This document shows positions 396 to 61,404 of a stretch of DNA of 64,000 nucleotides, one piece after another; the first letter of the stretch is position 1; each line of letters starts with the position of its first letter. The stretch is taken from positions 12,276,001-12,340,000 of the forward strand of contig NW_024704745.1 of NCBI RefSeq assembly GCF_018977255.1, in the 5' to 3' direction. Source of the stretch: Callorhinchus milii. Lineage: Eukaryota. The translations under genes and the position numbers were made by a program. The notes under the pieces were generated by a model. It made no database searches, was not told where the DNA came from, and saw only the letters and a list, made by a program, of their open reading frames with translations.

Positions 396-695
396 CGAAA
401 CCCCAAATCAGTGTCTCAGCTGATCCGGAGAGTGGGACCTCTGGAGTTCAGACTCTGACCTGTGTGGCTGCGGGATTTTTCCCGAGAGATCTGAATGTTT
501 CCTGGACGGTTGCGGGAGATGTACCGCACGAGACAGAGTCCGCATCTCTCACAGTGAACGACGACGGGACCTTCACTCTGAGCTCACGGCTGAGCCTCCA
601 AACCCCTGACTGGCGCCTGGGCTCTGCTGTCACCTGTCAGGTTCAGCACATCACCCTCATCCCACCGGGTACAGAGAGGATCAGCTTCACTGCGG
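396..695 (+). CDS. SIRPA-like: SIRP-family receptor, membrane-proximal C1-set Ig domain exon (gene starts upstream of window)
   Basis: Acceptor ttttaag|CG and donor GCG G|gtgag; 300 nt, phase 1-1. Encodes KPQISVSADPESGTSGVQTLTCVAAGFFPRDLNVSWTVAGDVPHETESASLTVNDDGTFTLSSRLSLQTPDWRLGSAVTCQVQHITL. Has canonical C1 motifs (C...F.P..L.V.W, N.DGTF...S.L, TCQV.H) and closely resembles SIRPalpha domain 3 (W..NGNVSRTETAS...ENKDGTY, TCQVEH). Confidence 0.9.
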
Positions 696-769
696 GTGAG
701 TCACGTTTCGCTTTGCGTCAAAAAGGGATCGCGTTCTATCGGGTGCGACTGGAAACGATAGTCACATAA

Positions 770-902
770 AAATAAAAATCAAAATCAAAATAAAAATCAA
801 AATCAAAATCAAAATTAAAATTAAAATTAAAATTAAAATTAAAATTAAAATTAAAATTAAAATTAAAATTAAAATTAAAATCAAAATCAAAATTAAAATC
901 AA
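770..902. repeat. Hexamer microsatellite (AAAATT/AAAATC/AAAATA)n
   Basis: About 22 tandem units directly visible. Confidence 0.95.
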
Positions 903-940
903 ACCCCCGACTTTATGTTCACGGTTTTGCAGTGGAGCTG

Positions 941-942
941 TT

Positions 943-982
<40 letters not shown>

Positions 983-983
983 C
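941..983. repeat. (GTT)n microsatellite
   Basis: Directly visible; source of the poly-Val and poly-Thr ORFs. Confidence 0.95.
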
Positions 984-1115
984 GTCCTCCTGATACAGAT
1001 ACTCTTTGCATCACCGGTTATCACACGTTTGCAACTCACCGTCAATAACCTCTTTTCCAGCAAATTGCAACCAAGTCCCCCCCCAACAACGGGCGACGTT
1101 GCAAAACGGGGGGGT

Positions 1116-1116
1116 C

Positions 1117-1172
<56 letters not shown>
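1116..1172. repeat. (CT)n microsatellite
   Basis: Directly visible. Confidence 0.95.
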
Positions 1173-1178
<6 letters not shown>

Positions 1179-1572
1179 GAGAAATTTTCCCGAGGAACGT
1201 GTCCACACGAAATTGCTGCGGATTTCAGCCTCTCATCCATCCCCTCGTGATATCAGAACCGGTGATGATAATAATTCTCAGTGTTGCACACGACGCACAG
1301 TAAAACCAACTCATAGCCCCCCAACAGCCTCTCTCTCTGCAGGGACTGGGAAAGTCCTTCTTGTCATTCTCAGAGCCCAAATGACAGCAATTTCAACAGT
1401 GAAGTGGGGGGTTTCGTCTCTGGAAGCGATGGATTTGGAGGTGAAGTCTCAACGACAAAGTGCATTGCTTTCCTCTGATCGCGATCTAAGGGTTTTGCGC
1501 TTTTCGTTGAGTAAAATAAGCCTCGACCGTGTGGGGAAGGCGAAGAGCTTATCGTCGGCTCAGTCGTCAGCA

Positions 1573-1574
<2 letters not shown>

Positions 1575-1607
<33 letters not shown>
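1575..1607. repeat. (AG)n microsatellite
   Basis: Directly visible. Confidence 0.95.
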
Positions 1608-1611
<4 letters not shown>

Positions 1612-1781
1612 AAGACACCGAAGGCGAGAGATCGCAGCGTGCGTTTGCTGTGATGTATTTAGTGTAAGTTGTGAACGTGCTTTGCAACTTCATTTCCCAA
1701 TATTCGCCTTTTTCGATGTGTTCCCGTAGAGAGGTCTCATTGACGCTTTAAAAAGGAGCAGTGGATGTGCCTTTTGCAATC

Positions 1782-2103
1782 GTGTCCTGGAGCTCAGTGG
1801 TGAGAGCACTCGACTTTGCAAGCGAGAGACCTGGGTTTAATTCCAGGCAGAGGGCGAAACCTTGGGCAAGTTTCCTTACTCCACACAGAGCCTAATAATA
1901 ATCCCTCCAAAAACCCAAAACAATAATTAAATTGGTCATTTTCAATCCGCGACTGTTTGCGGGACATTGCTGCGCGCAATTGGCCGCCGCGTTCGCCCAC
2001 AAATATACAGTCAATTCACTTTACAGTGCGTTCTGTGAAGCGCTTTGGGACGTCCTCCCGACGTGAAAAGCGCTATATCAAATGCAAGGATTATTATTTT
2101 ATT
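1782..2103 (+). mobile_element. Young tRNA-Ala-derived SINE, short form
   Basis: Pol III A box (agctcagtgg) and B box (ggtttaattcc), TGC anticodon loop, body tgtttgcgggacattgctgcgcgcaattggccgcc, L2-type tail aagcgctttgggacgtcc...aaagcgctatatcaaatgcaagg(att)n. Confidence 0.9.
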
Positions 2104-2639
2104 GTTAGTCAGTCCTGCTGCATCAATAGACATGACAACACCGTCTTAACAGTGTGTTCTGTACATCATCGACATTAGTGCCTATGGTTTTGGGGATTTA
2201 TTAGTAGGTCACTGGGACCTTGGGGTTGACACCCAAAGGGGCACAATTGCACATTTAAGTCTTAAGTTCCACAATTTTCAAGTTATGCTTTCTCGTCAGT
2301 GTATAGTGAACTCTCTAGATGAGAAGCGAGATGAAGAGGAGAGAGATAGAAACACTCTAACTTAGATTAGCAAAGGTGCCAAGAGCCTTAACCTATAATA
2401 TTTGGTATTTAGAGTTGTGTTGGACTGCTTGTAACAAGTTGCTGGATGGAGTGGCACAGTAAGAATGTAAGTTTACAATAACTAATAGTTGACATTAATG
2501 TGATGCAGTTATATTAACTGTTTGTGGTTAGTGTGTTTCAGTGCCTTCACAAGAAACGAGGATAAAACTGGAAGGAGATACAATAAAAATATTCCACTGT
2601 AAAAATTCAGAAGTGACAATGTTAAAGTGATAAAATTGT

Positions 2640-3030
2640 GGAGTCCTGTAGCTTAGTGATTAGAGCACTCGCTTCGCAAGCGAGAGGACTTGGGTTCGAT
2701 TCCCCGTCAGGGCAAAATGTTGGGCAAGTTTCCTTACTCCACACACCTCTGTTTACCTAGCAGTAAGTAGGAGCCCAGTTGTTAGTCGATTGGTGGATTG
2801 CTTTTCCGGGGTAATAATCCCTTCAAAAAAATATTAATTTGATCACTGAATCCACGACTGTTTGTGGGACACTGCTGTGTGCAATTGGCTGCTGTGTTTT
2901 GCTCACAAAATATACAATCGATTCACTTTACAGTATATTCTGTGAAGTGCTTTGAGACGTCTTGAAGATGTAATCAGGCGCTATCTCAAATGCAAGGATT
3001 ATTATTATATTAATATTGTATTTATTATTC
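2640..3030 (+). mobile_element. tRNA-Ala SINE, long form
   Basis: Starts ggagtcctgtagc; carries the extra central segment cctctgtttacctagcagtaagtagg; same tail as the short form. Confidence 0.9.
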
Positions 3031-3320
3031 CATAATGTTACACAAATAATGCATGTCATCTATATCTGCATGCTGCATTTCGCTCACAAATATACAGTCA
3101 ATTCACTTTACAGTATGTTCTTTGAAGTGCTTTGAGACGTCTAGAAGACGTGCAAAAAGTGCTATATCAAATGCAAGGATTATTATTATTATTATATCGT
3201 GTGAGTAATATTGCGTGAAAAGAATTGAATGTAACTTCATTTAAAACGTTAGCACTTGTGGTACATTGCTTGCAATCCATCCATATGGTTTATCATTCAT
3301 TTTTCAATTGTAATGTCAAG

Positions 3321-3425
3321 GTTTTTCTAAGTATCACTTCAGCCTGTTGAGTCTCATCATCATTGTCATCTTGCCATTTTGTGTCTGGATCATAAGGAAT
3401 CAGCGGGCTAAAGGGAAGAATGAAG
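3321..3425 (+). CDS. SIRPA-like: SIRP-like receptor transmembrane exon
   Basis: Acceptor tgtcaag|GT and donor GAA G|gtaat; 105 nt, phase 1-1, in frame with the C1 exon. Encodes GFSKYHFSLLSLIIIVILPFCVWIIRNQRAKGKNE: an uncharged hydrophobic span followed by a basic stop-transfer cluster. Confidence 0.8.
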
Positions 3426-3846
3426 GTAATCAATTACAAGTTGTTGAATTACAATCCAATGTGATTTAATATTTAACTGAACATCTCAGAAGTTATGGAG
3501 AAACCATTTTAACAGGAAAAATGTGAACAATATGAACTTAATTTTCCATATACTGTATATAACAATGTAACACGGATATGTAAGGTAGTTTAACATAGCT
3601 GCAAAAATAAAAATGTCGTGATATGCAAATGTCTCAATGTTGCCAAAATACAAATAGCCTAACAAGTAACTTAGTTACAAGCTTAACAAAACAGCTTGAC
3701 AAGTAACATAATTTTAATATGTAACTATGATAACACAGTGAATGCAAATATAAATACACAATAGATGTATAATTTCCACAATTATCCTTGTTATTACTGC
3801 ATCTTGTTGAATAAACCACGACGTGTTGTCTGAAATATTTGTACAG

Positions 3847-3908
3847 ATGTATCAATCTGCAAAGATGATAGAAAAATAGGCCAAAGAGGAAATGAATCAG
3901 GTCATGAA
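3847..3908 (+). CDS. SIRPA-like: SIRP-like receptor short cytoplasmic exon
   Basis: Acceptor ttgtacag|AT and donor GAA|gtaagt; 62 nt, phase 1 to 0. Encodes DVSICKDDRKIGQRGNESGHE and supplies exactly the phase change needed between the TM and terminal exons. Confidence 0.8.
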
Positions 3909-4534
3909 GTAAGTATATTTTTTGATATTTTTTGAAATGTTCCTGTTAGAATTTGGTTCTATTTTATGAAGTTAATTGATATCTACCGTGTATAGATTAA
4001 ATTCTACGCAATATTCTAAATGTGGTTTGACGAGTGGTGCAGCCGTACAAGATTAGAACAACTCGTTTCAACTCAGAAAGAAAATGCAATTGATTTACCT
4101 CGGTGTGTCAGCCGAGCTCAATTGGTAGCACTCTCGCCTCAGAGTCTGGAGGTTGAGGCCGCACATCAGCACCATTGCAAAGTTTCTCTTCAGGTTTGAT
4201 ATTTCACGGTGGGACTTCTGTCTGAACAACACGGTCCAGTAAAAAAAATGTAATTTGGGTTTGCAGTCTACTTCTATTATTGGGACAAATTCCACTTGGG
4301 TCTATATTCACTGTATGTTTGTAGCTTCTCAGAGCAACAATAATAATAATAATTCTTGCAGTAAATATAACATCTGATCATGTCGATGAGGTGTCTCAAA
4401 GCGCTTTACAGGAAATACTGTAAAGTGGATTGACTGTGTATTTTGTGGGTGAACCCATGTGCACAATACTCCAAAATCAGGTGTTAGTTTATTTTTAAAA
4501 TGTTGTTAAATATTGCTTGTGAATCCAACTTATT

Positions 4535-4830
4535 TAGGGATTAGAGCACCTGTCTGGGTTTGATTCCTAGGCAGGGCAAAACTTTGGGCAAGTTTCATTA
4601 CTCCACATGCGTCTATTCAACTTGCAGCAAGTAGGAACATAGTTGTTAATCGATTGTTGGATCGCTTTTCCGGAGGTAATAATCCCTTCAAAAATAATAA
4701 CAACAACTTGGTCACTGCCGCGTTTTGTCCACAAAATATTCAGTCACTTTACAGTATATTCTGTGAAGCGCTTTGAAACGTCTCGAGGACATGATAAGAT
4801 CAAATGCAAGGATTATTTTTATTATTATTT
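4535..4830 (+). mobile_element. Diverged long-form tRNA SINE
   Basis: gggcaagtttcattactccac...gcagcaagtaggaac plus the family tail. Confidence 0.75.
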
Positions 4831-4989
4831 TCTATATGTCTAGCTGTATCATATATATATCTATACTTTAAAATAGCCAGTTGTACCAGAGATCTGTGAA
4901 GTTAAAGATAATTTTTAACACCATCGCATGAAAACAAGCACTTTCAAAACTTAGAACTTGCTCATTAATTTAAATAAAATGACTTGTTT

Positions 4990-5230
4990 TCACTTCTAAT
5001 AACAGTGGATGTAAGGACACTGGCTGATGAAAAAACAGGAAGCCTGACTCATTGGCAGTACTTGGAGGGGTAGAATTTTTTTCTACGCTAGCTGGGCAAG
5101 TAGTGGGAACTTTACCAGATAGTGCTCTGAATGGCAAGTTGTGCAGTTTTAGCGAGTTAAATTCCAGCAGTACTCGATCACACACTTCTGGAGTACAATT
5201 CAGCACTGATGCTAGATCAACTCAAAGGAA
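4990..5230 (+). mobile_element. Unclassified interspersed repeat (family X), diverged internal fragment
   Basis: Aligns by eye to 5660-5790, 30640-30770 and the reverse complement of 21560-21680. Confidence 0.55.
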
Positions 5231-5290
5231 ATAAGGAAGGTTTTTCCCAAGAACTCTGACGTGAATGTAAAACTCCAGTCTATGTTACAG

Positions 5291-5545
5291 GAAAATACGT
5301 TTCGCAGTGAGGATGCACAGAATTATGCCTCTATTATCTTCAAAGATCCTGTGAAAAGAAACAATAAACAACTGCAAATGCCAGATCCTGACCACACGAC
5401 AGAATACGCTGCCTTGAAGGTCAAAGATAAAAATAAACAATTCTATGAAGATTCGGTTTATTATGCCACAGTTACGGTACAGCCCACAACATACAGAAGA
5501 CAAACTGATGAATGCAATGCAACCACATTTGCCGTGCTCAAGTAA
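5291..5545 (+). CDS. SIRPA-like: SIRP-like receptor terminal exon with ITIM/ITSM-like tyrosine motifs
   Basis: Acceptor gttacag|GAA, phase 0. Encodes ENTFRSEDAQNYASIIF...PDHTTEYAALKV...YEDSVYYATVTV...ATTFAVLK*. HTTEYAAL and EDSVYYATV parallel SIRPalpha NHTEYASI and EDTLTYADL. Confidence 0.88.
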   Translation, partial: ENTFRSEDAQNYASIIFKDPVKRNNKQLQMPDPDHTTEYAALKVKDKNKQFYEDSVYYATVTVQPTTYRRQTDECNATTFAVLK

Positions 5546-5559
5546 AACATGTTTAATAT

Positions 5560-6000
5560 GCTGTTTCATCACCAGGACCTGGATGAGCAAACTCGTCACT
5601 GGGGGCAGGGAGTCATTCCACTCAGCTCCTGTTAACCCTGCAAAGCCAAAGCCCTAATGGGTAGGGTGGTCCTAGCTGGAGTAACAGCAGGAAAGCTTGC
5701 CGGACAGCAATATCAATAGCAAGCTATGTAGTTTTAGCTGGTTAGACTCCAGCAGCACCCCCAACGCACACTCTAGGGTCCCCAAGCCTTGACTGTTGGC
5801 AACCTGAGCCGAATACTTTCCGGAATTAGATAAGCAGGCTGCATCCTTCTAGGGAGAGAGTCTGGATTCATTTCCAACAATCTATCTCTGGGATTTTCAT
5901 GTGTAGTTAGATGCATGGAAATCTCAGTTTGGTTTGGATACTCTTAAGCATGGTGATGGGTTTCCGCATGAGTCACACGCCCGGTTGACCAAGAAACAAT
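5560..6000 (+). mobile_element. Unclassified interspersed repeat (family X) in the SIRP-like 3' UTR
   Basis: Matches the reverse complement of 21410-21760, and also 30550-30870 and 44990-45190; ends in an A-rich stretch. Confidence 0.75.
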
Positions 6001-12334: not shown

Positions 12335-13215
12335 AGAATTGTTCAGCACAAAAAGAGGCCATTCGGCCCATCGAGTTTGTGCCGGCTCTTTGAAAAGAGC
12401 AATGTAATGTCAATCCCACTCCCCAGCCCTTTCCCCATAACCCTGCAAACCCGTCCTCCTCAAATACCCGTCCACCGCGTTTTTAAAAGTAGTTATCGAA
12501 TCGGCCTCGACCACCCTTTCAGGCAATGCGTTCCAGATTCAAACAACTCGCTGAGTGAAAACATTTCTTCTCACCTCCCCTCTGCTTCCTTTAGATACTA
12601 TTTTGAATCTGTGACCTCGAGTCACCGACACACCCACCAGTGGAAACAGTTTTTCCCTTTCTAACCTATCAAATCCCCTCATGATTTTGAAGACCTCTAT
12701 TAGGTCTCCTTGTAACCTTCTCTGCTCCAATGAGAATAATCCCAGCCTCTCTAGCCTTCCTCATAATCGTCCCTCATTCCTGGTACCATCCTCGTAGATC
12801 TCCTCTGCACCTTTCCAATGCCTTAACATAGTGTGGTGCCCAGAACTGGGCGCAGTATTCTAACTGAGGCCTAACCAGTGTTTTATATAGGTTAATCATA
12901 ACCTCCTGACTCTCGTACTCTATGCCCCTATTTATAAAGCCTAGTATCCCATATGCTCTTATTACAGCTTTATATACCTGTCCTGCATCCTTCAAGGATT
13001 CATTTACCTGCACCCCCAGGTCTCTCTGTTCTTTTACCCCCCTTAAGATTGTATTATCAGCCTGTATTGCCTTCCCTCATTCTTTCTACCAAAATGCATT
13101 ACTTCGCATTTCTCCACATTGAAATTCATCTGCCATATGTCTGCCCATTTTACCATTCTGTCTATGTCTTCCTGCAGTTGGCTGCTATCCTTCTCACTGT
13201 TAACCACCGTACCTA
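12335..13215 (-). mobile_element. CR1 LINE, 5'-truncated, RT C-terminus plus 3' UTR
   Basis: Peptides LQEDIDRMVKWADIWQMNFNVEKCEVMHFG, LYKTLVRPQLEYCAQFWAPHY, RRLQGDLIEVFKIM...TRGH. Confidence 0.93.
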
Positions 13216-14071
13216 ACTTTGTGTTGTGTGTCTTGATGTGTGTCTTGAACCCACAATCCTCTGACTGTACTACTACAGAGGAAGTGGCCTTTATTACCCA
13301 GTGAATCTTCTTGAACAAACTGAATGTTGTACTATTTCTAGTTGCTGAATTCCTGCTTGGCTGGTTTGATATCCTACTGTGGTGATTTACTATGTTTATA
13401 GTTATGACCAATATGATAATGGCAAATGCTCTAGTTTTTTTAAAATATATTTATAAACATAATATTTAGTACAACAGAAATCCGAAACAAACACAAGATC
13501 TTCTGTTACAATTTTTCCCTTCCTCCCAAAACCAAAAAATCATTCCGTTGTTTACAGTACATTCCTTCACCGCACATGGGTTGTGCACACGTTTTTTGGG
13601 ATGATCCCTTTACAAACTATCACTTCTCTTACAGCTATTGGGGTAAAAATTCTGTTTAGCATTGCGTGTAGCACTTTTAGTTATGCATGATTCTGATGGC
13701 GAAATCCCAATAGTGGTTGACCATTACCAAAGATGATGTGCACAATTTTTACTCCACTACTTTAGATGTCATTTTGGAGGCTTTCTCTTTATCCCACACT
13801 TAATGCCGCTATTGTTTTACAAGGTAACTGTAGTTTCTCTTACCCACCTGTATTTTTCCACCAAATTTATAATAATAATAATAATCATTACAGTTGATAC
13901 AGTGCCTTATCACAGTTCTGGTGTAGAGACATCTCAAAACACTTCATAGGATATACTAGAAAGTGGTGTGACTGTCTATTTTTGCTGGCGAATTGTTTAA
14001 AACAGAAATGTTTTACATTTCAATAATGGCTCATTATAATAAAACCTGGACTAGTCTATAACACTGAAGCA

Positions 14072-14974: not shown

Positions 14975-16060
14975 TTGAACAATAGCTAACGGGAAGAAAA
15001 CAAAGAGTAGGGATAAACTGGTCCTTCTCAGATTGGCGGGATGTGACTGGTGGAGTGCCACAAGGATCAGTGCTTGGGCCTCAACTATCTACAATCTACA
15101 TCAACGATCTCGATGAGGACATCGAACTTAATATATCCAAATTCACGGATGACACTAAACTAGGAGGGAGAGTAAACACCGAAGATGACATTAAAAAAAT
15201 GCAATGAGATATAGATAGGCTAGGGAGTGGGCAAATAGGTGGCAGATGAAGTATAATTTAGGGAAGTGTGAAGTCATCCACCTAGGTGGCAAAAACAGTA
15301 GAGCAGATTATGTTTTAGAAGGGAAGAGACTCGATAGTGTTAGCGTTCAGAGGGACTTGGGTGTCCTTGTACACCAGTCACAAAAAGTTAGTATTGCAGG
15401 TACAGCAAGCAATTAGGAAGGCTAACGGTATGTTGGCATTTGTTACAAAAGGGTTAGAATATAAGAGTAGAGAAGTCTTGCTGCAACTGTATGGGGCCCT
15501 GGTGAGTACCTAGAGTATTGTGTGCAGTTTTGGTCTACTTATTTAAGAAAGGATGTACTCCCCTTGGAGTGGGTACAACGTAGATTCACTAGGTTGGTAC
15601 CTGGGATAAGGGTGATGAGTAATGAGGATAGGTTGAGCAAATTAGGCCTATATTCTCTAGGATATAGAAGAATGAGAGGTGATCTTATAGAAACCTATAA
15701 GATTATTAAGGGGCATAACAGAATAGATAGTGGGAGACTTTTTCCCCTGGTTGGAGAAACTATAACCAGGGGTCACAGTCTTAAAATTCGGGGTAAGCCC
15801 TTTCGCACTGAGTTGAGGAAAAACTACTTCACTCAGAGGGTAGTGAATTTATGAAATTCTCTACCCCAAAGGGCTGTAGATGCTCAGTCCGTGAACATAT
15901 TCAAGACTGAGATTGATAGATTTCTTGTGGATAAAGAGATTAAGAGATATGGGGATAAGGTGGTAGGTGGAGTTAGAATAGATCAGCCATGATCTTATTG
16001 AATGGCAGGGCAGGCTCGAGGGGCCGAATGGCCTACTCCTGCACCTAATTCTTATGTTCC
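14975..16060 (+). mobile_element. CR1 (HER1-like) LINE, 5'-truncated, about 1.1 kb
   Basis: RT motif GVPQGSVLGPQL..IYINDL, FTDDTKLG, C-terminal RRMRGDLIETYKII...TRGHSLK, and tail gagggccgaatggcctactcctgc...ttcttatgttc. Confidence 0.95.
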
Positions 16061-17574: not shown

Positions 17575-18393
17575 TGCATCATTAATAATAATAATATTAC
17601 TTATTATGTCCTTGCATTTAGTATACCGCCTTTCACATCAGGAAGATATCCCAGAGCTTTTCACAGGATTTCTTGTGAAGTGGAGTGATTGTGTATTTGT
17701 AGGCGAACTCGACAAATTGTACCCAAATGTGCCCAGTAATAATAATAATAATAATAATCCTTGCATTTGATATAGCACTTTTCACGTCGGGAGGACGTCC
17801 CAAAGCACTTCACAGAACACACTGTAAAGTGAATTGACTGTATATTTGTGGGCGAACGTGGCAGCCAATTGCGCACAGCAATGTCCCACAAACAGTCGTA
17901 GATTGAAAATGACCAATTTTATTATTGTTTTGTTTTTTTGGAGGGATTATTATTAGGCGTGTGGAGTAAGGAAACTTGCCCAAGGTTTCGCCCTGTCTGG
18001 AATTGAACTTGGGTCTCTCGCTCCCCCTTCCTCGCTCCCCCTTCCTGCAAAGCGAGTGCTCTAACCACTGAGCTACAGGACAATAATGTCCCACAAACAG
18101 CCATGGTGTGAGTGACCAATTTTATTTGGAGGATTGTTGGCCGGGACATCAGGCAAAGCTCCCTTCTCTTTTCAAATGATGCCATGGGATCTTTAACATT
18201 CACCTGAACAGACAGACAGCACCTCGGTTTAACATCCCATCCGAAGGACAGCACCTCTGACAATGCAACACCTACCCTAGTGTTGCACTGGAGAGTCAGC
18301 TGAGACAATGTTAGTTCATATCCCTACTTGAGGCTTCAACCCACAACCTTCTGACTCAGAAGTGAGAATGCTATCACTGAGCCAGACTGACAC
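17575..18393 (-). mobile_element. Old DeuSINE interrupted by a young SINE
   Basis: Tail at 17575-17735; Deu body and head at 18082-18393. Confidence 0.8.
17738..18081 (-). mobile_element. Young tRNA SINE nested in the old DeuSINE
   Basis: Full-length short form; anticodon arm carries a ctcgctcccccttc x2 insertion. Confidence 0.92.
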
Positions 18394-21409: not shown

Positions 21410-21920
21410 TGTGGTTTGTTTTTTTGGTCCGCTGGGTGTCTGACACATGTGGAAACCCATCACCATGCTTAAGAGTTTCCAAACCAAGCTGAGATTTCAA
21501 TGCATCCCACCAACACATGGACAGTATTAGGCGCAGTTTGGCAAGAGCCAAGGCTTGGGGACCTCAAAGTGTGCGTAGGGGTACTGCTGGAGTCTAACCA
21601 GCTAAAACCACATAGCTTGCTCACTGACATTGCTGTCTGGCAAACTTTCCTGCTTATCCAGCTAGGACAACCCTACCCCTTAGGGCTTTAGCTTGCAAGG
21701 TTAACAGGAGCTTTGTGGAATGACTCCTTGCCCCCAGTGACTGGTCTGCCCTTCCAGGTCCTGCCGATGAGCCACGCTGAGCTGTGCTGTCATCAGCAGT
21801 GCCCTGGAATACTGCGGACTTGCCTGGCTCAGGAACTCAGCAACAGAGGGCTGGCTTGATTCCAGCATTTCATTGCCAGGAATGTCACCTGGAAGCCAGT
21901 TCAGCTGCAAGGGGACCCCA
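21410..21920 (-). mobile_element. Unclassified interspersed repeat (family X), long copy
   Basis: Reverse complement matches 5580-5995 and 30410-30790; A-rich tail (T-rich on +) at about 21395-21425. Confidence 0.78.
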
Positions 21921-23901: not shown

Positions 23902-24225
23902 GGAGTCCTGTAGCTCAGTTGTTGGAGCACTCGCCTCGCAAGTGAGAGACCTGGGTTCGACTCCCGGCAGGGCGAAACCTTGGGCAGGTTTCCTTACTCC
24001 ACACACCTGATAATAATCCCTCAAGAAAAAAAACAATAATAAATTGATCACTTCAATTCACGACTGTTTGTGGGACACTGCTGTGCGCAATTGGCTGTCG
24101 TGTTTCAACCATAAAATATAGTCAATTCATTTTACAGTATATTCTGCGAAGGGCTTTGAGATGTCTAGAAGACGTGATAAGGTGCTATATCAAATGCAAG
24201 GATTATTATTAATATTATTATTATA
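23902..24225 (+). mobile_element. tRNA-Ala SINE, short form
   Basis: ggagtcctgtagctcagttgttggagcactcgcctcgcaag...ggttcgactcc plus tail. Confidence 0.9.
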
Positions 24226-30409: not shown

Positions 30410-30880
30410 TTGGAGATGAGCTGGCTCCAAGGTGATGAGCTTGTCAACTGAATGTCGGAATTGAGTCAATTCACTGTGGCAATCTTGGTAGTTCAGTTCT
30501 GAGCTAAGCGGATATGCAGTACTCCAGGATATTGCTGATGAAAGTCCAGCCAGTTCATCAACAAGACTTCCAAAGGAGACCAGTCAATGCCAGGAGGGAC
30601 TCTTCCCATTCAGCTCCTGTTAACACTGCAAACCCAAACCCTAATGGGTGGGATAGTCCTAAATGGACAAGCAGTGGAAGCTTGCCAGACATTGCTCTCA
30701 ATGGCAAACTATATGGTTTTAGCAGGTTACACTCCAGCAGTAGCCCCAACATGCATTCTGGGGTCCCCAATTTGGATTCTTTTGCCAACCTGCCCTTAGT
30801 ATCCACAGAATTAGGTAAATAGGGTGCATCATTCGGGTGGGGGGTGGAGAGTGCACATTCCATTCTAGACACAGGGGAAT
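30410..30880 (+). mobile_element. Unclassified interspersed repeat (family X)
   Basis: gagctggctccaaggtgat...gcagtactccaggatattgctgatga...cagctcctgttaacactgcaaac...cagaattaggtaa. Confidence 0.75.
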
Positions 30881-39276: not shown

Positions 39277-40990
39277 AGAACATAAGAAATTCTAGAGGGA
39301 AAAAGAGCAAGTTCACCTTCCACCTTCCTGGCGGTCACATGCACATATGTCCCAAACTACCTATGTACTATATCCCATAATGTTATAATAATAATAATAA
39401 TTCTTGCATTTGATATAGCGCTTTTCATGTCTTCTCGACATCTCAAAGTGCTTCACAGAATAGACTGTAAAGTGAATATTTTTTTGGGCGATGTCCTCAC
39501 TTTCAAGGCCCTCCGTGGCCTTGCCCTCTCCTACCTCTCCGACCTGCTAACCCCTTATCAACCTGTTCGCTTCCTCCCCTTAGCAGGCTCCGGTCTGCTC
39601 CATGTGCATGCACATGTTATTTCCTAAAAGAAAGCTATCTAATCTGTGTTTGAAAGAATCAACACTTCTGGCTTCCACCATCTCCCTTGGGAGACTGTTC
39701 CACAAGTTTATTATTCGCTCACTGAAATAGTGTTTGTGTAGGTTCGTTCTGAATTTACCCCCCTTCAATCGCAGACTGTGTCCTCTGTTTTTACTATTCA
39801 GGACAAGTTGAAACAGCCTCTCATGATCTATATTGTCTTGCCCCTTTAGAATCTTAAAGACAGCAATCATGTTGCCTCTCAATCTTCTCTTTTCCAGCGT
39901 GAACAAGCCCAATTTATTTAGTCAGTCCTCATAATCCAGTCCTTCTATTCCCTCAATCATTTTGGTTGCCCTCCTATGTATCTTCTCGATTTCTCCAATA
40001 TCGTTTTTGTACTGCGGAGACCAGAATTGTACACAGTACTCTAAGTGTAGTCTTACCAATGATTTATACAGTAGCAGGATTACCCCACTATTTCTGCTTT
40101 CTCTTGATCTTTTGATACATGCCAACATCTGGTTTGTTTTACTCACAGCCACAGAGCATTGTTGGGAGAGCTTCAATTTATTGTCAATCAAGACCCCCAG
40201 ATCCTTTTCATTTTCTATACATATTATTTTCCTTCCGTTCAAATACTAGTCCCTTCCAGGATTTTGTGTCCCCATGTGAAGGACTTTACATTTCTCCACA
40301 TTGAATTTCATCTGCCAGCGATCTGCCCAATTCCCAAATATGTTCAAATCCTCCTGTAACCTATCTTGTTCAGCTTCGCAATCTACCACCTTCATTAGCT
40401 AGGTGTCATCTTAGCCACTGTGCTTGCGACTCCTAGTTCCAGATCATTTATAAAAATATTAAAAAATAGAGGTCCCAAAACATACATTTGTGCAACTCCA
40501 CTGATAACATTTTTCCAGTCTGATGTCATTCCCTGTACCACCATCCTCTGGGTTCTTCCTGTCAACCAATTGCGTATCTGTTGTAATATACCTCCATTGA
40601 TTCCCGCTTTCTTTACTTTCAGTACCAGCCTCTCAAGAGGAACTGTATCAAAGGCCTTACTGAAATCCAGATATACAATATCCACAGCCTTACCCTTATC
40701 AAGCTCCCTTGTCACATCGTCAAAGAAAACCAGTAAATTAGATTAGCAAGACGTTCCCTTTACCAACCCATATTAGCTATCATTTATGATTTTATTTCTG
40801 TCCAGATGCTCCCTAATTTTATCCTTAATAAGTCTCCATAATTTTACCCACAATGGATGTCAAACTTGTGGTCTGTAGTTTCCTGGGTCACTTTTGTTAT
40901 CTTTCTTAAGAATGGGAGTAACATCTGCCTTTTTCCAGTCCCACGGCATGCTCCAGTATTCGGATACTGAATAGATAATTTGAAAGATAA
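39277..40990 (-). mobile_element. CR1 LINE, about 1.5 kb, RT domain plus C-terminus, interrupted at 39386-39619
   Basis: VDIVYLDFSKAFDTVP...SGV.Q..VLGPLFFNIFINDL; LYKSLVRLHLEYCVQFWSPQY; LEKRRLRGNMIAVFKIL. Confidence 0.95.
39386..39619. mobile_element. Chimeric insertion: SINE tail (-) fused to L2 fragment (+)
   Basis: SINE tail 39386-39491, L2 piece 39492-39608, flanked by duplicated atgtta. Confidence 0.8.
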
Positions 40991-42232: not shown

Positions 42233-44969
42233 TAATATTACTATTATCAATTATTAATTTGGGTTCTTTAATGCCTATTTCATTGATAAATTGTTAATAA
42301 CAACAATAATAAATCTTGCTTTTGATATAGCGGCTTATCAATAGTCTCAAGGCATTTCAGACGATTTCTACCGTGGAGGGCAGTCACTGTATTTCGTATC
42401 CTTTTTTATTCTTTCTTGCTGCAGATTTTTTACTTTTGTACACACAGAAATGCTGCTATCTTCTATAAATCACACTGAACCAATTCTATATTTAAGGTTC
42501 TTAGAGAGTTATGATTTCCCGCTGGCTGTTGGCAGCTCATTATTTCGGAAAGTTTTAAAAAATAATTGCAATATTTGTTTTATTGTAAAAAGAAAAACAC
42601 AGTCTTCTCATAATATTACTGTTAATACACAATTAAAATGTGTGTATTATTTTAAATAGCTGGACGAGACTCTATATCCTTAGTTATCCATTAATAGCAT
42701 AAACACAAGTAGAATTTCTCTTTTTGATCCAGTGTGTGACAAATTCATAATGTTAATAATTAATTGGACTTAGATTTCACAGACATTATTTGGCCCAAAA
42801 CATTCAAATTGCTAGTAAGTGATGACGCTTTAGATAGGACTGGCAGGATAGCCCTCTGGGCAATTATTTGATCATCATTGTATTTAATGTCAAAGATTAG
42901 TAATGTTGTCACCACAAGAGCAGATTTATTGAGAATTTTTAAAGAATTATCACCACTGGCCCTTACAAAGCAAATTGCTGGAATTCTTTATGGAATTTTG
43001 CCATGAATTTGCACCAATGCGTTATCTTCCACTCCAAGATGACTTGCTTTTAGAATTGTGTTTGTTTGAAAGAGAATGAGGACGCTTGGGAAATATGTGC
43101 CGTGACCTCTGTACCAACTTATATTGTTGGATCATATATTAGTGATTTACAGTTGGTGTGATTTCCCTAGAAATCTCAAGGGTCAAATTCATAAACACGT
43201 GTCCTGGGGTTTGCTGGGGTCCATTTTAGTCATATCCCATTGATTTTCCATGTAATATAAAGAAAGGAAAGATTTAGCTGCTCAGTTTTAGGTAAATTAT
43301 ATGAGATTCCTTCAGTAATTCTGGTACTAATGTTGATCGTAATGATCAGATCACACACCCACAAAAAATGTCACCCCAAGAAACGATGAAGCAAAATAAA
43401 GAGGGTTGAGTAGCATTCAAGGGTGCTTTTTATTGCTGACTTACAAACATTTGTGTGATTCAAGAGAGCTGGTGCGGAATCCCCTCATTCCAAATCAATG
43501 GGAAAAATACTAACCTCCCTCCCCCCTCTTTCCAGATTAAAATGGAAACGGATTGTGCCTGCACAGTTACCACAGAAACTCTTTCTCAGTTTCCTGCAGT
43601 TACTGTACGTCAATTTCCATTCACAGCCTAAATTATTCATAATGGCTTTGGGCCAGTAAGGATCATTCACAATGTTTGAGTCTGTGGGGGAGAGATTGCT
43701 AGCGATCCCATAGGTACTGATCAAGACGACATGGAGCACCATAGAGGGTATAAACTGACAATCATGAGAATATAACTTATAGAAGCTATAAACAGACAAA
43801 CACAAGAATAGAGCTTGTGAACACTCAAGTAACTGAGGAAAATGCTAATAATTTAATAATAGTTTGAGGATTTTAATGTAAAATGTAGCCACTGTGTATT
43901 TTGTAGGTGAAATGCAGCAGCGAATTTGCATTCAGCATCGTCCCACAAACAGCTGCGAAGTGAACAACCTAAAAAAGTGAGTTGCAAAGGATTTAAGTCA
44001 AATAATGAATGAGATCAAATGTGTTATCTGACTGATATCCCACATTGTATTTTGCTCTCTAACACCTGTGTGGGGAAATTTGTCTGAAAACAAAAATCGG
44101 ATTTGTACAAGCTTGAGAGCTCCATAGCAAAACATCATAAAACAGGCTCCAATTTTTTTGAACTGTAAAACAGCAAAGCTGCAGTTATACAATACATCAT
44201 GAGGCTCATGAGTGAGATATGATAAATGACTCCACACATGAGGCTAGCCATTATCCTCTTACAGAGCCATTTATCATGCAAGAACATAGAAGGCATGGAA
44301 TGAAAAAAAGATCGTTTTCGCCATCATAATGATCCCACCAAGAAATCATTTATGATTTACGCCATCACGACTCTTCCTAATTTATTGCCCCTGACAAAAA
44401 GCCCAAGATAAAGTTGAACATTTTCATTCAGTCTTTGCTTCCAAAAGGGGAACCTATATGCTATATTTCCCTTTACCTTCTCTGATTGAGCCTGGTGGTT
44501 TTTTTTAAATTGAGGAACCTCAATGAAGGGGCGAGGGCTCAGGCTAGGCCCACACTGCAGGAGACTGTCAGGTTTGAAAAGAGATGGTGAGAAAAAAGAA
44601 CAAGTCAAGAAACACTGTTTAAGTCATGCTAGGTTTAGAAGTCTTTGTTTCAGTACAGTGAAGGTGCACGCGAACAAAAACAATTGTAATTAAATTGTAT
44701 TTCATTTAACAATAAAATTGTAGTCAACATTAAAATTGTATTTTATCTATAACAAATCTATATTTCTCTTTGTAAATCTCTCCAATGACTGCTACTTTCC
44801 TTCAACTAATAAGACATTAAGCCTCAGCATATGCTGTTCCCTCTCCAGTACCATGTGATGGGAGGCAAAATCCTTTGGGCTAGGACTTGTTTAGCGAATT
44901 GTTTCTTCTCCCCTCCCCCTCTTCCAGTAATAGAGAATGCTCTTCTAACATGAGATGCTCTCCGGTCCC

Positions 44970-45200
44970 CAGCACTTGTGTCTTGCCATCTTTCGCCTAC
45001 TACTTCACGGAATTAGGTAAGCAGGATGCATCCCTCCACAGAGAGAGCGCATATTCTATCCAACAATCTACCTCTGGAATTTCTGGAATGTGTAGGTGGG
45101 ATGCATCTCCCAGTTCGGTTTGGATACTCTTAAGCATGATGGTGGGTTTCCTTCTGCGCATGTCAGACACCCGGCTAACCCAAAAAATCAAGAGATGCTC
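44970..45200 (+). mobile_element. Unclassified interspersed repeat (family X), 3' part
   Basis: ggaattaggtaagcaggatgcatcc...tttggatactcttaagcatgatggtgggtttcc...gtcagacacccggctaacccaaaaaa. Confidence 0.75.
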
Positions 45201-52194: not shown

Positions 52195-52526
52195 AATTTA
52201 ATAATAATAATAATAATAATCCTTGCATTTGATATAGCGCTTTTCACGTCGGGAGGACGTCCCAAAGCACTTCACAGAACACACTGTAAAGTGAATTGAC
52301 TGTATATTTGTGGGCGAACGCGGCAGCCAATTGCTCACAGCAATGTCCCACAAACAGTCGTAGATTGAAAATGACCAATTTATTATTGTTTTTGGTTTTG
52401 GAGGGATTATTATTAGGCTCTATGTGGAGTAAGGAAACTTGCCCAAGGTTTCGCCCTCTGCCTGGAATTGAACTCAGGTCTCTCGCTTGCAAAGCGAGTG
52501 CTCTAACCACTGAGCTACAGGACTCC
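52195..52526 (-). mobile_element. Young tRNA-Ala SINE, short form
   Basis: Full-length, ends ctacaggactcc; among the least diverged copies. Confidence 0.93.
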
Positions 52527-55200: not shown

Positions 55201-55513
55201 TTATAATAATAATCCTTGCATTTGATATAGTGCTTTTCACGTCTTCTTGACATCTCAAAGCGCTTCACAGAATAGACTGTAAAGTGAATTGACTGTATAT
55301 TTGTGGACGAAACGTGGCAGCCAATTGCACACAGCAGTGTCCCACAAACAGTCGTGGATTAAAAATGACCAATTAATTATTGTTTTATTTTGGAGGGATT
55401 ATTATTAGGCGTGTGGAGTAAGCAAACTTGCCCAATGTTTCGCCCTGCTTGGAATTGAACTCAGGTGACTCACTTGCAAGGCAAGTGTATCTAACCACTG
55501 AGCTACAGGACTC
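55201..55513 (-). mobile_element. tRNA SINE, short form
   Basis: Full-length family match. Confidence 0.9.
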
Positions 55514-59714: not shown

Positions 59715-59718
59715 GAGG

Positions 59719-59753
<35 letters not shown>

Positions 59754-59762
59754 CATCATCAC
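59715..59762. repeat. (ATT)n(ATC)n tract, probably an eroded SINE tail
   Basis: Preceded by gctttggagacgtctcg...gatagtgcgagg, a GC-drifted version of the SINE tail. Confidence 0.7.
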
Positions 59763-60553: not shown

Positions 60554-60580
60554 ATGCGGGAGTCCCGGCGGCGACCCTGA
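60554..60580 (+). other. Short upstream ORF (MRESRRRP*) before the MAN1A2 start
   Basis: aggATGc context with A at -3; TGA at 60578-60580, about 80 nt before the main ATG. TSS position is unknown. Confidence 0.45.
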
Positions 60581-60661
60581 GGTTTCCCGCGGCTGCCGGG
60601 GGCCGGGCGGACCTCCCTTGCCGGCTCGCGAGGAGGCGCGGTTGGGGGCTTATCGATGAGG

Positions 60662-61017
60662 ATGTCGAGCCCGGCGCTCCTACCCGTGTCCAGCCGTCGG
60701 CTCGCGGCTCTGAGCCCGAGCTCGTCCGCCTCCTTTTACCCGCATCACAGAGCCACCCTGCGGCTGTCGGAGAAATTTATCCTCCTGCTCATCCTCAGCG
60801 CCTTCATCACCCTGTGCTTCGGGGCCATCTTCTTCCTGCCCGACTCGTCCAAGCACAAGCGCTTCGACCCGCTGGGGCTGCACGACGTGCTGATCCCGCA
60901 CGTCGACCAGGCGGCGAGGCCGGCGGGACGAGACGGCAGCGCCGGGCCACAAGGAGGAGGCGGCGGCGGCGGAGTCATGGTGCATGGAGGCGGGGAGGAG
61001 CATCGGCACCGACACAG
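60662..61017 (+). CDS. MAN1A2: Mannosyl-oligosaccharide 1,2-alpha-mannosidase IB (GH47), coding exon 1
   Basis: Encodes MSSPALLPVSSRR...FYPHHRATLRLSEKFILLLILSAFITLCFGAIFFLPDSSKHKRFD.LGLHDVLIPHVD...EEHRHRH, near-identical to the MAN1A2 N-terminus and type II TM anchor. Ends at donor CAC AG|gtaccg (phase 2). An in-frame ATG lies 6 nt upstream at 60656. Exon 2 was not found within the window. Confidence 0.95.
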
Positions 61018-61404
61018 GTACCGACCGCAGCAGCAGCGGCGGCGGCGGCAGCGGCAGCGGCGGCGGTAGCCCCGTCTCTGCGTGTTGGTGACTGCTCGGG
61101 CGGGTTAGCGCCGCAAGTCAGGGCCAGAACAAGGGGAGGGAGATCCGTTCCTCCTGCGAAAAGAGGAAGGAAGGAGAGAGGGAGAGAGATAGGGAGGGAG
61201 GGGGGGGTGGGGGGGGCTGCGGGTTTAAAGCAGGAGACCCGGGAAGTGCAAAAGGATTTTTATTTTTATTTCGCCGCAACCCTGAATGAAAGATGAGGCA
61301 GTGTCAGAGCTGTGCCCCCGCCGATGGTCCGCGGAACTCGTCGTTGTGGCTGTTTAGTAGCATTAGGGCCCTGAACGCTAACAGCATCGCGCACCAACAC
61401 ACAC

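What the first reader, a model, noticed from the sequence alone, without database searches (positions are those of the whole stretch)
396..5545. Reconstructable SIRP-alpha-like inhibitory receptor in a probable cartilaginous fish
Seen: four exons the ORF track does not link (396-695, 3321-3425, 3847-3908, 5291-5545) join with phases 1-1-0 into one frame: C1-Ig, uncharged TM, then a tail with QNYASI, TEYAAL and VYYATV. Motif spacing is 27, 19 and 22 codons (the last to TTFAVL). Established: mammalian SIRPalpha has four tyrosine motifs at similar spacing, recruits SHP-1/2 and delivers the CD47 'don't eat me' signal. Inference: a SIRPalpha-type checkpoint receptor exists in this early-branching jawed vertebrate.
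Basis: partly seen in the sequence, partly recalled or inferred. Interest (0 to 1): 0.7.

Follow-up and report, generated by a model that had tools for sequence, protein, structure and literature searches.

The report
Shark-lineage V-C1 inhibitory receptor gene tail
The four exons are the real 3' half of a chimaera gene for an immune-type surface receptor with inhibitory tyrosine motifs; it resembles mammalian SIRP-alpha in layout, but nothing here shows it to be the SIRP-alpha/CD47 "don't eat me" receptor.

Summary
Exons 396-695, 3321-3425, 3847-3908 and 5291-5545 (+) have AG/GT borders and phases 1-1-0. They splice into one 239-aa frame: C1-set Ig domain (Pfam E 1.2e-17), uncharged transmembrane helix, then a tail with QNYASI, TEYAAL, VYYATV and TTFAVL spaced 27/19/22.

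A database protein 98% identical uses the same junctions. The catshark orthologue has the same exon layout and phases (300/105/71/252 nt).

Full-length relatives were found only in sharks, rays and chimaeras. They read leader, one-exon VJ-type V, a single C1, TM, tail; SIRP has V-C1-C1.

A profile of the tail, searched against 1.84 billion proteins, found six proteins, all cartilaginous-fish, and no SIRP-alpha. V and C1 domains score no closer to SIRP than to Ig or TCR domains.

The gene lies 55 kb upstream of MAN1A2 exon 1. Shark paralogues abut a TTF2-like gene. That interval corresponds to human 1p13-p12, not the SIRP cluster at 20p13.

Best reading: a cartilaginous-fish VJ-C1 receptor with ITIM-type motifs, SIRP-like in design, with unknown ligand. 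NCBI already auto-names shark copies "SHPS-1-like". I found no paper describing the family.

The parts
396..695 (+). Exon encoding the C1-set Ig domain (phase 1 in, phase 1 out). Residues 1-99 are KPQISV...ISFTA, with the Cys pair C22/C79 and the FFPRDLNVSW and CQVQH hallmarks. The leader and VJ exons lie upstream of the window start.
   Evidence: Splice borders and frame. Pfam C1-set E 1.2e-17. tblastn with shark and chimaera proteins E 1e-28 to 1e-62. Catshark orthologous exon is also 300 nt.
3321..3425 (+). Transmembrane exon of 105 nt, phase 1/1. The uncharged helix FSLLSLIIIVILPFCVWII is at 3338-3394, followed by the basic stop-transfer RNQRAKGK. Because the exon is symmetrical, skipping it keeps the frame (a soluble isoform is possible).
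   Evidence: Catshark TM exon is also 105 nt. NCBI isoforms P0011 and P0012 lack exactly these 35-36 residues. P0014 is also listed as a shorter isoform, but its sequence was not read.
3847..3908 (+). Short cytoplasmic exon of 62 nt, phase 1 in, 0 out: (D)VSICKDDRKIGQRGNESGHE.
   Evidence: Same junctions in P0001. Catshark counterpart is 71 nt with the same phases.
5291..5545 (+). Last coding exon (84 codons plus TAA). It carries QNYASI (5318-5335), TEYAAL (5399-5416, ITSM-like), FYEDS (5441-5455), VYYATV (5456-5473, canonical ITIM) and TTFAVL (5522-5539). The last motif is Tyr in all sharks and Phe here.
   Evidence: The tail alignment shows the four tyrosines invariant across 7 sequences. 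tblastn E 1e-12 to 1e-53.
5566..5996 (.). Interspersed repeat directly after the stop codon, inside the presumed 3' UTR. It is not part of the coding gene.
   Evidence: blastn finds copies at 21420-21770 (-), 30595-30834 (+) and 44958-45186 (+), at 73-86% identity.
60662..61017 (+). Coding part of MAN1A2 (Golgi alpha-1,2-mannosidase IB) exon 1, ending at donor CACAG|gtaccg. It sits in a CpG island of about 59.5-62 kb. This is the downstream neighbour that fixes the synteny.
   Evidence: Database hits named MAN1A2 / mannosidase IB at E 1e-33 to 1e-29, 60-65% identity, about 88% coverage; MAN1A1 reaches only E ~1e-8. Donor site. GC 0.54-0.76 and CpG o/e 0.8-1.3.

Best explanation
The four exons are the 3' half of one member of a small multigene family found here only in cartilaginous fishes. 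The family encodes a non-rearranging, type I membrane glycoprotein: split leader, a single-exon VJ-type V domain (off the window), one C1-set domain, an uncharged transmembrane helix and a cytoplasmic tail of about 115 residues.

Proposed mechanism:
- The V domain binds an as yet unknown ligand, and the C1 domain acts as a stalk.
- On engagement, Src-family kinases phosphorylate the conserved tail tyrosines.
- The phosphorylated ITIM (VxYxxV) and ITSM-like (TxYxxL) motifs, 19 residues apart, dock tandem-SH2 phosphatases (SHP-1/SHP-2) and perhaps SAP-type adaptors. These dampen activating signals in the leukocyte that carries the receptor.

Shown here: the exon structure, the domain types, the motifs and their conservation, the taxonomic range and the genomic neighbourhood.

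Inferred: phosphorylation, phosphatase recruitment, inhibitory output and the cell type.

The gene works like SIRP-alpha and other ITIM receptors. It is not demonstrably a SIRP orthologue, and there is no evidence that CD47 is its ligand.
For: Gene model:
- Consensus splice sites and one open frame.
- P0001, 98% identical, uses identical junctions.
- Catshark exon lengths are 300/105/71/252 nt with the same phases, a 96-nt leader intron and a one-exon VJ.

Domains:
- C1-set E 1.2e-17.
- V-set plus C1-set in full-length sharks.
- J-like FxGxGTxLx[IV] motif in all members.

Tail:
- Y167, Y194, Y207 and Y213 are invariant across chimaera and sharks at 38-46% overall tail identity between this chimaera copy and the sharks.
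- The TM is uncharged.

Range:
- Full-length profile search: 15 hits, all Chondrichthyes.
- Tail profile against 1.84e9 representatives: 6 hits, all Chondrichthyes.

Multigene status:
- Extra Callorhinchus C1 exons at 85-91% identity.
- Two loci about 130 kb apart in Hemiscyllium.

Synteny:
- MAN1A2 exon 1 lies 55 kb downstream in the window.
- A V-C1 paralogue lies tail-to-tail with a roughly 1220-aa SNF2/Helicase_C gene in Hemiscyllium and in Cetorhinus; the Hemiscyllium product also has a GRF zinc ribbon. I read this gene as TTF2.
Against: - No expression or protein data were available, so function is inferred from motifs only.
- The first motif is not a canonical ITIM in this copy (Gln at -2), and the fourth has Phe instead of Tyr. 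This copy has one canonical ITIM plus one ITSM-like motif.
- The V exon of this particular copy is outside the window, so intactness of the whole gene is not shown.
- The 'cartilaginous fish only' range depends on HMMER and word-filter sensitivity. The exhaustive search was run on the tail only, not on the ectodomain.
Confidence: 0.75

Rival explanations
1. It is the true cartilaginous-fish orthologue (or co-orthologue) of SIRP-alpha. [quoted passage not shown]
For: - The design is the same: VJ-type V, C1-set, uncharged TM, and four tyrosine motifs in sharks. Their spacing of 27/19/22 compares with 24/17/26 in human SIRP-alpha (sequence from memory).
- The local alignment to the SIRP-alpha tail is collinear: motifs 1, 2 and 3 pair up, including HTEYA.
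- Full-length human SIRP-alpha is nominally the best of my reference set (50.9-60.7 bits summed over domains; V domain 18.9 bits).
- NCBI auto-names several members 'SHPS-1-like' or 'SIRP beta-1-like'.
Against: - There is one C1, not two. The ray's second C1 is a near-identical recent internal duplicate.
- The tail profile finds no SIRP among 1.84e9 proteins. The tail z-score of 2.3-2.8 is matched or beaten by CD33, up to 4.4.
- A 26/20/25 spacing also occurs in 2B4, so the spacing is not diagnostic.
- Per domain, the C1 scores higher against IgG CH3 (43.6 bits) and Ig kappa C (38.4) than against SIRP d3 (34.3) or d2 (24.8). The C1 tree is unresolved.
- SIRP V is absent from the top 60 PDB hits of the V domain.
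- The locus is TTF2-MAN1A2 (human 1p13-p12), not 20p13 (the human map is from memory).
Confidence: 0.12
2. In evolutionary identity it is closer to the antigen-receptor lineage (Ig light chain, TCR or UrIg-like) than to SIRP. It would be a non-rearranging VJ-C1 relic in an MHC-paralogous region that secondarily acquired an ITIM tail by exon shuffling.
For: - It has the split leader with a 96-nt intron and a one-exon VJ followed by a single C1 exon, which is the antigen-receptor gene layout (layout criteria as described in PMC12227049).
- The best PDB sequence hits of the V profile are Ig VL, TCR V-alpha/V-delta and shark NAR V, at 30-39 bits.
- The best fold matches are Ig light chains.
- NCBI names some isoforms 'immunoglobulin kappa light chain-like'.
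- The same TM/tail module is attached to a different V-type ectodomain in Callorhinchus P0009, at 69-71% tail identity. This suggests the tail is a mobile module.
- The TTF2-MAN1A2 interval lies near NOTCH2/CD2/VTCN1 in human, an MHC-paralogous region (from memory).
Against: - Typical antibody and TCR V domains score no better than SIRP V against the family profile (15-17 versus 18.9 bits). The high PDB hits are the extreme of thousands of diverse antigen-receptor V sequences.
- The C1 tree is a polytomy.
- The AlphaFold model is of low confidence in the V domain (mean pLDDT 65).
- P0009 may be a chimeric gene model.
Confidence: 0.1
3. This copy is a dead or mis-joined gene: a pseudogene fragment, or exons that are not spliced together in vivo.
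For: - The V and leader exons are not in the window, so intactness cannot be shown.
- The fourth motif has lost its tyrosine.
- Several Callorhinchus models of paralogous C1 exons run into intron sequence (P0005, P0007, P0008).
Against: - All four exons are open with consensus splice sites.
- There are only 4 amino-acid differences from an independent model that continues upstream into a V domain.
- Exon sizes and phases are conserved with the catshark.
Confidence: 0.03

Closest known systems
SIRP-alpha (SHPS-1 / PTPNS1) and the SIRP family
   Same: Non-rearranging VJ-type V domain followed by C1-set Ig, a rare combination outside Ig/TCR/MHC. Single-pass uncharged TM. A long tail with several Yxx[ILV] motifs at 17-27-residue spacing, including a shared (H)TEYA motif. 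The expected output is SHP-1/2 recruitment.
   Different: One C1 instead of two. No detectable tail homology by profile search. V and C1 are not specifically SIRP-like. A different chromosomal neighbourhood (TTF2-MAN1A2 rather than 20p13). The ligand is unknown. No charged-TM 'beta' partner was seen among the members retrieved.
Ig light chains / TCR chains (rearranging antigen receptors)
   Same: A two-domain V-C1 ectodomain, split leader with a short intron, the J-like FxGxGTxL strand, and the best sequence and fold hits in the PDB.
   Different: V and J are fused in one germline exon, so there is no rearrangement. It has its own TM and an ITIM-type signalling tail. It is located outside the Ig/TCR loci.
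UrIg / UrIg2 of elasmobranchs (PMC12227049)
   Same: A non-rearranging VJ exon plus C1-type domains, split leader, and restriction to cartilaginous fish. UrIg2 is the top PDB hit of the C1 exon, summed over its three C domains.
   Different: UrIg has three C domains, UrIg2 nine or more. They are MHC-linked or Ig/TCR-linked, and UrIg is secreted. The present family has one C1, an ITIM tail and lies in the TTF2-MAN1A2 interval.
VTCN1 (B7-H4), the V-C gene of the human TTF2-MAN1A2 interval
   Same: Position between TTF2 and MAN1A2 (human map from memory), and a V plus C two-domain ectodomain.
   Different: There is no sequence affinity: VTCN1 V scores 12 bits and VTCN1 C gives no hit (human sequence from memory). 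VTCN1 has a minimal cytoplasmic tail without ITIMs.
Other ITIM/ITSM receptors (CD33-related Siglecs, 2B4/SLAM family, PECAM-1)
   Same: Motif types LHYASV/L and TEY..[VIL]. The spacing resembles the four ITSMs of 2B4, 26/20/25. Tail similarity to CD33 is as high as to SIRP-alpha.
   Different: Their ectodomains are unrelated (V-C2 or I-set), and none has a C1-set domain.

Membership tests
SIRP family | Ectodomain of one V-set followed by two C1-set domains | tested here: not met
   Shark full-length members and the chimaera model P0001 have V plus one C1. Only the ray Hypanus has two, and they are near-identical to each other, so it is a recent internal duplication.
SIRP family | VJ-type V domain (J-like GxG strand G encoded with V in one exon) | tested here: met
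   FxGxGTxLx[IV] occurs in all members, including P0001. The VJ is one exon in the catshark. The V exon of this copy lies outside the window.
SIRP family | Domains group with SIRP domains rather than with Ig/TCR/MHC/B7 domains | tested here: inconclusive
   The C1 ML tree is an unresolved polytomy. Bits against the window C1: IgG CH3 43.6, IGKC 38.4, SIRP d3 34.3, SIRP d2 24.8. Bits against the V profile: SIRP d1 18.9, V-kappa 17.3, NKp30 16.0. SIRP is absent from the PDB top 60.
SIRP family | Cytoplasmic tail homologous to SIRP-alpha's four-tyrosine tail | tested here: not met
   A tail profile against 1.84e9 proteins gave 6 hits, all Chondrichthyes. Smith-Waterman z is 2.3-2.8 against human SIRP-alpha and up to 4.4 against CD33. 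The resemblance is at motif level only.
SIRP family | Conserved synteny with the SIRP cluster (human 20p13) | tested here: not met
   The window has MAN1A2 exon 1 55 kb downstream. In Hemiscyllium and Cetorhinus a TTF2-like SNF2 gene is adjacent to a paralogue. The human positions 1p13.1-p12 versus 20p13 are from memory.
SIRP family | Binds CD47 | not testable with these tools
   This needs a binding assay with the species' own CD47.
ITIM-bearing inhibitory Ig-superfamily receptors (functional class) | Type I membrane protein with an uncharged TM, so no DAP12/FcR-gamma pairing residue | tested here: met
   FSLLSLIIIVILPFCVWII at 3338-3394 has no K, R, D or E. The same holds in sharks.
ITIM-bearing inhibitory Ig-superfamily receptors (functional class) | At least one (S/I/V/L)xYxx(I/V/L) motif in the tail, conserved | tested here: met
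   VYYATV is at 5456-5473, and this tyrosine is invariant in the 7-sequence alignment A3; the incomplete Heterodontus model P0003, not in A3, has Cys there (VHCSAV). TEYAAL (TxYxxL) is invariant. QNYASI is a canonical LHYASV in most sharks.
ITIM-bearing inhibitory Ig-superfamily receptors (functional class) | Phosphotyrosine-dependent recruitment of SHP-1/SHP-2 and an inhibitory output | not testable with these tools
   This is an inference from motifs only.
Rearranging antigen receptors (IgL/TCR) | [quoted passage not shown] | tested here: not met
   The catshark L2-VJ is one continuous exon, 10137-10472 of L001, ending after ...GEGTKLNVQ.
UrIg / UrIg2 | VJ followed by three or more C1-type domains; MHC- or Ig/TCR-linked | tested here: not met
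   The family has one C1 domain and lies in the TTF2-MAN1A2 neighbourhood. The family definition is from PMC12227049.
B7 family (VTCN1 as positional candidate) | Sequence affinity of the V and C domains to B7 members; short tail without ITIM | tested here: not met
   VTCN1 V scores 12.1 bits and VTCN1 C gives no hit (sequences from memory). Pfam CD80-like C2-set scores only E 7.4e-5 against C1-set 1.2e-17. The tail is about 115 aa with ITIMs.

The most novel reading that the evidence does not exclude
The family may be a surviving non-rearranging VJ-C1 receptor lineage that dates to the origin of jawed-vertebrate immunity. It would be a sister of SIRP and/or of the antigen-receptor precursor, kept only in cartilaginous fishes in the TTF2-MAN1A2 interval of an MHC-paralogous region. 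It retains the split leader and one-exon VJ of antigen-receptor genes but is wired to an inhibitory ITIM tail. It would then be an additional data point, beside NKp30, PRARP, UrIg and UrIg2, for reconstructing where VJ-C1 genes sat before the RAG transposon invasion. It would also bear on whether inhibitory signalling was an early use of the V-C1 unit.
Probability: 0.2. Interest if true: 0.7.

Novelty: new member of a known kind. Interest (0 to 1): 0.4.

Why it matters
C1-set domains outside Ig, TCR and MHC are few: SIRP, tapasin, B7-H6 and UrIg. Each has been used to reason about how adaptive immunity was assembled.

This is a conserved V(J)-C1 receptor with an inhibitory tail, present in chimaeras, sharks and rays, and not detected in bony vertebrates by the searches run here. 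It shows that the SIRP-like design (antigen-receptor-like ectodomain plus ITIM tail) existed in the oldest living jawed vertebrates.

It does not show that the CD47-SIRP-alpha axis itself is that old. Automated names such as "SHPS-1-like" should not be read as orthology. The locus gives comparative immunologists a concrete place to look, between TTF2 and MAN1A2.

Tried and rejected
- **UrIg/UrIg2 identity.** The top PDB hit of the C1 exon was UrIg2. That score is summed over three C domains, and the architecture, linkage and tail differ, so I rejected it.
- **C1-only phylogeny.** A tree with human reference domains was unresolved.
- **Structure route.** AlphaFold on a 10-sequence alignment gave mean pLDDT 65, with a poor V domain. 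Foldseek returned only Ig light chains at TM about 0.3. This is uninformative beyond 'V plus C1'.
- **Word-filtered profile search of the full-length family**. It returned only cartilaginous-fish proteins, but it scores only 8000 word-sharing candidates. It is therefore weak evidence of absence elsewhere.
- **Neighbourhood look-ups.** Those for P0013, P0018, P0006 and P0019 showed no other gene within 10 kb. P0009 and P0015 were not on record.
- **Naming TTF2 from the PDB.** This failed because no TTF2 structure is held. The TTF2 call rests on domain architecture and size.
- **Other Ig exons in the window.** I looked for further Ig exons of this family or of the CD2-like P0009 and found none.
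- **Literature.** Eight searches found no description of this family. The Ohta 2019 'primordial immune complex' paper and the PRARP paper are not held.
- **VTCN1 as positional orthologue.** Rejected on sequence.

Full report

Yes. The four segments at 396-695, 3321-3425, 3847-3908 and 5291-5545 on the + strand are each preceded by AG, and the first three are followed by GT(A/G)AG. Their lengths (300, 105, 62, 255 nt) give intron phases 1, 1 and 0. Joined, they read as one open 239-codon frame ending at TAA 5543-5545.

- Pfam scores residues 9-86 as a C1-set Ig domain (E 1.2e-17, 64 bits against a cut-off of 21).
- The second exon encodes FSLLSLIIIVILPFCVWII, which has no charged residue.
- The last exon carries QNYASI, TEYAAL, VYYATV and TTFAVL, with the Tyr/Phe at residues 167, 194, 213 and 235.

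**2. Independent support for the splice model**

- A database protein (P0001, UniParc UPI0003D81EA5, 306 aa) is identical at 235 of 239 positions. It uses the same three junctions and continues upstream into the C-terminal part of a V domain.
- Shark proteins hit exons 1, 2 and 4 by tblastn.
- I reconstructed the catshark orthologue exactly from its genomic locus L001. It has a 40-nt leader exon, a 96-nt intron, a single exon for the rest of the leader plus the whole V domain including the J-like strand, then exons of 300, 105, 71 and 252 nt with the same phases as in the window.
- In two sharks NCBI lists isoforms that lack exactly the 35-36 residues of the 105-nt TM exon (P0011 and P0012). 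A third shorter isoform, P0014, was listed but not read. This fits the exon's symmetrical phase.
- RNA evidence could not be examined here.

**3. What the gene is**

Full-length relatives came only from Chondrichthyes: Heptranchias, Heterodontus, Mustelus, Scyliorhinus, Hemiscyllium, Stegostoma, Cetorhinus, the rays Hypanus and Narcine, a skate, and Callorhinchus.

- The complete shark models are 362-374 aa and read leader, V-set, one C1-set, TM, tail.
- The V domain ends in FxGxGTxLx[IV], so it is a VJ-type domain.
- Only the ray Hypanus has two C1 domains. They are almost identical to each other, so this is a recent internal duplication.
- Callorhinchus milii proteins carry further C1 exons at 85-91% identity. 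The window therefore comes from a chimaera (Callorhinchus or very close), and the gene belongs to a small multigene family.
- The window holds only the 3' half of one copy. No other exon of the family is present in the remaining 58 kb.

**4. The tail**

Aligning the cytoplasmic regions of this chimaera copy, a second Callorhinchus tail and five sharks gives 38-46% identity between this copy and the sharks. The four tyrosines Y167, Y194, Y207 and Y213 and much of the TEYAxLKVKDKN block are invariant.

- The VxYxxV site is a canonical ITIM, and TxYxxL is ITSM-like.
- The first site is a canonical LHYASV in most sharks, but has Gln at -2 in the chimaera.
- The last site is T(T/I)Y(A/V)SL in the five sharks whose tails reach it, but TTFAVL here, so this copy cannot be phosphorylated there.
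- Conservation of exactly these residues across the chimaera-shark split (several hundred million years, from general knowledge) is the main argument that the tail is a working signalling module.
- I searched a profile of the tails exhaustively against 1.84 billion representative proteins. It found six proteins, all from cartilaginous fishes, and no SIRP or any bony-vertebrate protein.
- A similar four-motif spacing (26/20/25) occurs in 2B4.
- The resemblance to SIRP-alpha is therefore at the level of short linear motifs, as among ITIM receptors in general.
- One Callorhinchus model (P0009) joins a different V-type domain to a 69-71% identical TM/tail. Either the tail module has been shuffled between neighbouring receptor genes, or that model is chimeric.

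**5. The ectodomain**

- Against all PDB sequences, the C1 exon is best matched by multi-domain Ig heavy chains and shark UrIg2, at about 32-39 bits per domain.
- A maximum-likelihood tree of these domains leaves the family in an unsupported polytomy with TCR C-beta, SIRP d3, IgM CH2 and tapasin.
- The V domain is very divergent. The family profile's best PDB hits are Ig VL, TCR V-alpha/V-delta, shark NAR V, CD4 D1 and contactin, at 29-39 bits, with no SIRP in the top 60.
- However, ordinary antibody and TCR V domains score 15-17 bits, about the same as SIRP-alpha d1 at 18.9. The high hits are the tail of a very large, diverse set.
- AlphaFold gave only a moderate model (pLDDT 65, with the C1 good and the V poor). 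Foldseek returned Ig light chains at low TM-score.
- Conclusion: this is a genuine VJ-C1 ectodomain, equidistant within error from SIRP and from antigen-receptor chains.

**6. Neighbourhood**

- ORF 60656-61069, inside a CpG island, is the first coding exon of MAN1A2. Database fragments named MAN1A2 or mannosidase IB match at E 1e-33 to 1e-29 with 60-65% identity over about 88% of the query, whereas MAN1A1 matches only a 25% stretch at E ~1e-8.
- The receptor gene therefore ends 55 kb upstream of MAN1A2, on the same strand.
- In the epaulette shark a short paralogue (P0016) lies tail-to-tail with a 1218-aa gene carrying a GRF zinc ribbon, SNF2 and Helicase_C domains. The full-length paralogue P0006 is about 130 kb further along the same chromosome, in the opposite orientation.
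- The basking shark shows the same adjacency, with a 1220-aa SNF2/Helicase_C gene.
- That architecture and size fit TTF2. This is an inference; no name-bearing tool could confirm it.
- In human (map from memory) the order is CD2-PTGFRN-CD101-TTF2-TRIM45-VTCN1-MAN1A2 at 1p13.1-p12, near NOTCH2, which is an MHC-paralogous region. The SIRP cluster is at 20p13.
- The family thus occupies the interval that holds VTCN1 (B7-H4) in human, but it shows no sequence affinity to VTCN1.

**7. How it most likely works**

Shown here: a type I protein with a VJ-C1 ectodomain, an uncharged TM and a tail whose conserved residues are tyrosines in ITIM/ITSM contexts.

Inferred, from the established behaviour of ITIM receptors such as SIRP-alpha, whose phospho-ITIMs recruit SHP-1/SHP-2 (PMC12975943):
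- Ligand binding by the V domain leads to phosphorylation by Src-family kinases.
- The pair Y194/Y213, 19 residues apart, then docks tandem-SH2 phosphatases, and activation of the bearing leukocyte is dampened.
- The TxYxxL site could also recruit SAP-type adaptors.
- TM-exon skipping could give a soluble form.

The ligand is unknown, and nothing here points to CD47.

**8. Comparison and novelty**

The closest known design is SIRP-alpha. The closest gene layout is that of Ig light chain and TCR genes and of UrIg. Membership in the SIRP family fails on three tested criteria (two C1 domains, tail homology, synteny), is met on two generic ones (VJ-type V, C1-set), and is undecided on phylogeny.

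I found no paper describing the family in eight full-text searches. Predicted proteins are already in public databases under automated names ('SHPS-1-like', 'SIRP beta-1-like', 'Ig kappa light chain-like', 'uncharacterized').

I therefore rate it a new, uncharacterised member of a known kind (ITIM-bearing Ig-superfamily receptor with a C1 domain). The specific claim of an ancient SIRP-alpha/CD47 checkpoint is not supported.

The most novel reading still open, at about 0.2, is that this is an old non-rearranging VJ-C1 lineage retained in an MHC-paralogous region. That would be relevant to the search for relatives of the antigen-receptor precursor discussed in PMC12227049 and PMC10751288.

**9. 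Caveats**

- Human reference sequences (SIRP-alpha, Ig, TCR, MHC, B7-H6, VTCN1, CD33, 2B4 and others) and human map positions are from memory.
- The V exon of this copy is off-window.
- No expression data were available.

Noticed in passing
window 60662-61017 (+), CpG island about 59500-62000: First coding exon of MAN1A2 (Golgi alpha-1,2-mannosidase IB), with a GC-rich promoter island: GC up to 0.76, CpG o/e 0.8-1.3. The exon ends at donor CACAG|gtaccg. The glycine-rich stretch GGGGGGG is an insertion relative to human.
   Followed up: yes
window 5566-5996; copies at 21420-21770 (-), 30595-30834 (+), 44958-45186 (+); weak partial copy 5088-5187: An interspersed repeat family (73-86% identity between copies) starts 20 nt after the receptor's stop codon, so it lies in the presumed 3' UTR. 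A degenerate piece also lies just upstream of the last exon. The first AATAAA after the stop is at 6819.
   Followed up: partly
window 2643-2714, 23904-23975 (+); 52453-52523, 55440-55512, 17987-18083 (-): ARAGORN calls tRNA-Ala-like (and one tRNA-Cys-like) structures. These are heads of tRNA-derived SINEs. The same element, with a conserved '...gggcaagtttccttactccaca...' body, recurs many times, including three times in introns 1 and 3 of the receptor gene (about 1780-2100, 2640-3000, 4540-4810).
   Followed up: partly
window 39580-40715 (-); also 13043-13411 (-), 15522-15854 (+): Broken LINE open reading frames. The one at 40398-40715 hits Pfam RVT_1 (E 3e-7). The others look like C-terminal LINE ORF2 pieces (similar '...LWNSLP...' ends) but gave no Pfam hit.
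   Followed up: partly
window 770-900, 945-985, 1115-1170, 1570-1606: Dense microsatellites in intron 1 of the receptor gene: (AAAAT/AAAATC)n, (GTT)n, (CT)n and (GA)n.
   Followed up: no
protein P0009 (Callorhinchus milii, UniProt A0A4W3HYH3), not in the window: A gene model that joins a different, CD2/SLAM-looking V-type domain (Pfam V-set only E 0.005) to a TM and tail 69-71% identical to the window's. This is either exon shuffling of the inhibitory tail between neighbouring receptor genes or a chimeric model. Its locus could not be retrieved.
   Followed up: partly
L004 (Hemiscyllium CM036670.1, 59.37-59.40 Mb) and L005 (Cetorhinus OZ077462.1, 35.01-35.04 Mb): In two shark orders a short V-C1 paralogue (216-237 aa, with no TM or tail in the model) sits tail-to-tail with a roughly 1220-aa SNF2-helicase gene whose Hemiscyllium product also has a GRF zinc ribbon (TTF2-like). 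It may be a secreted family member or a truncated model.
   Followed up: partly
protein P0015 (Hypanus sabinus): The ray orthologue has two nearly identical C1 domains in tandem. This isoform also has an alternative tail without the ITIM block, which points to lineage-specific remodelling of the family.
   Followed up: no
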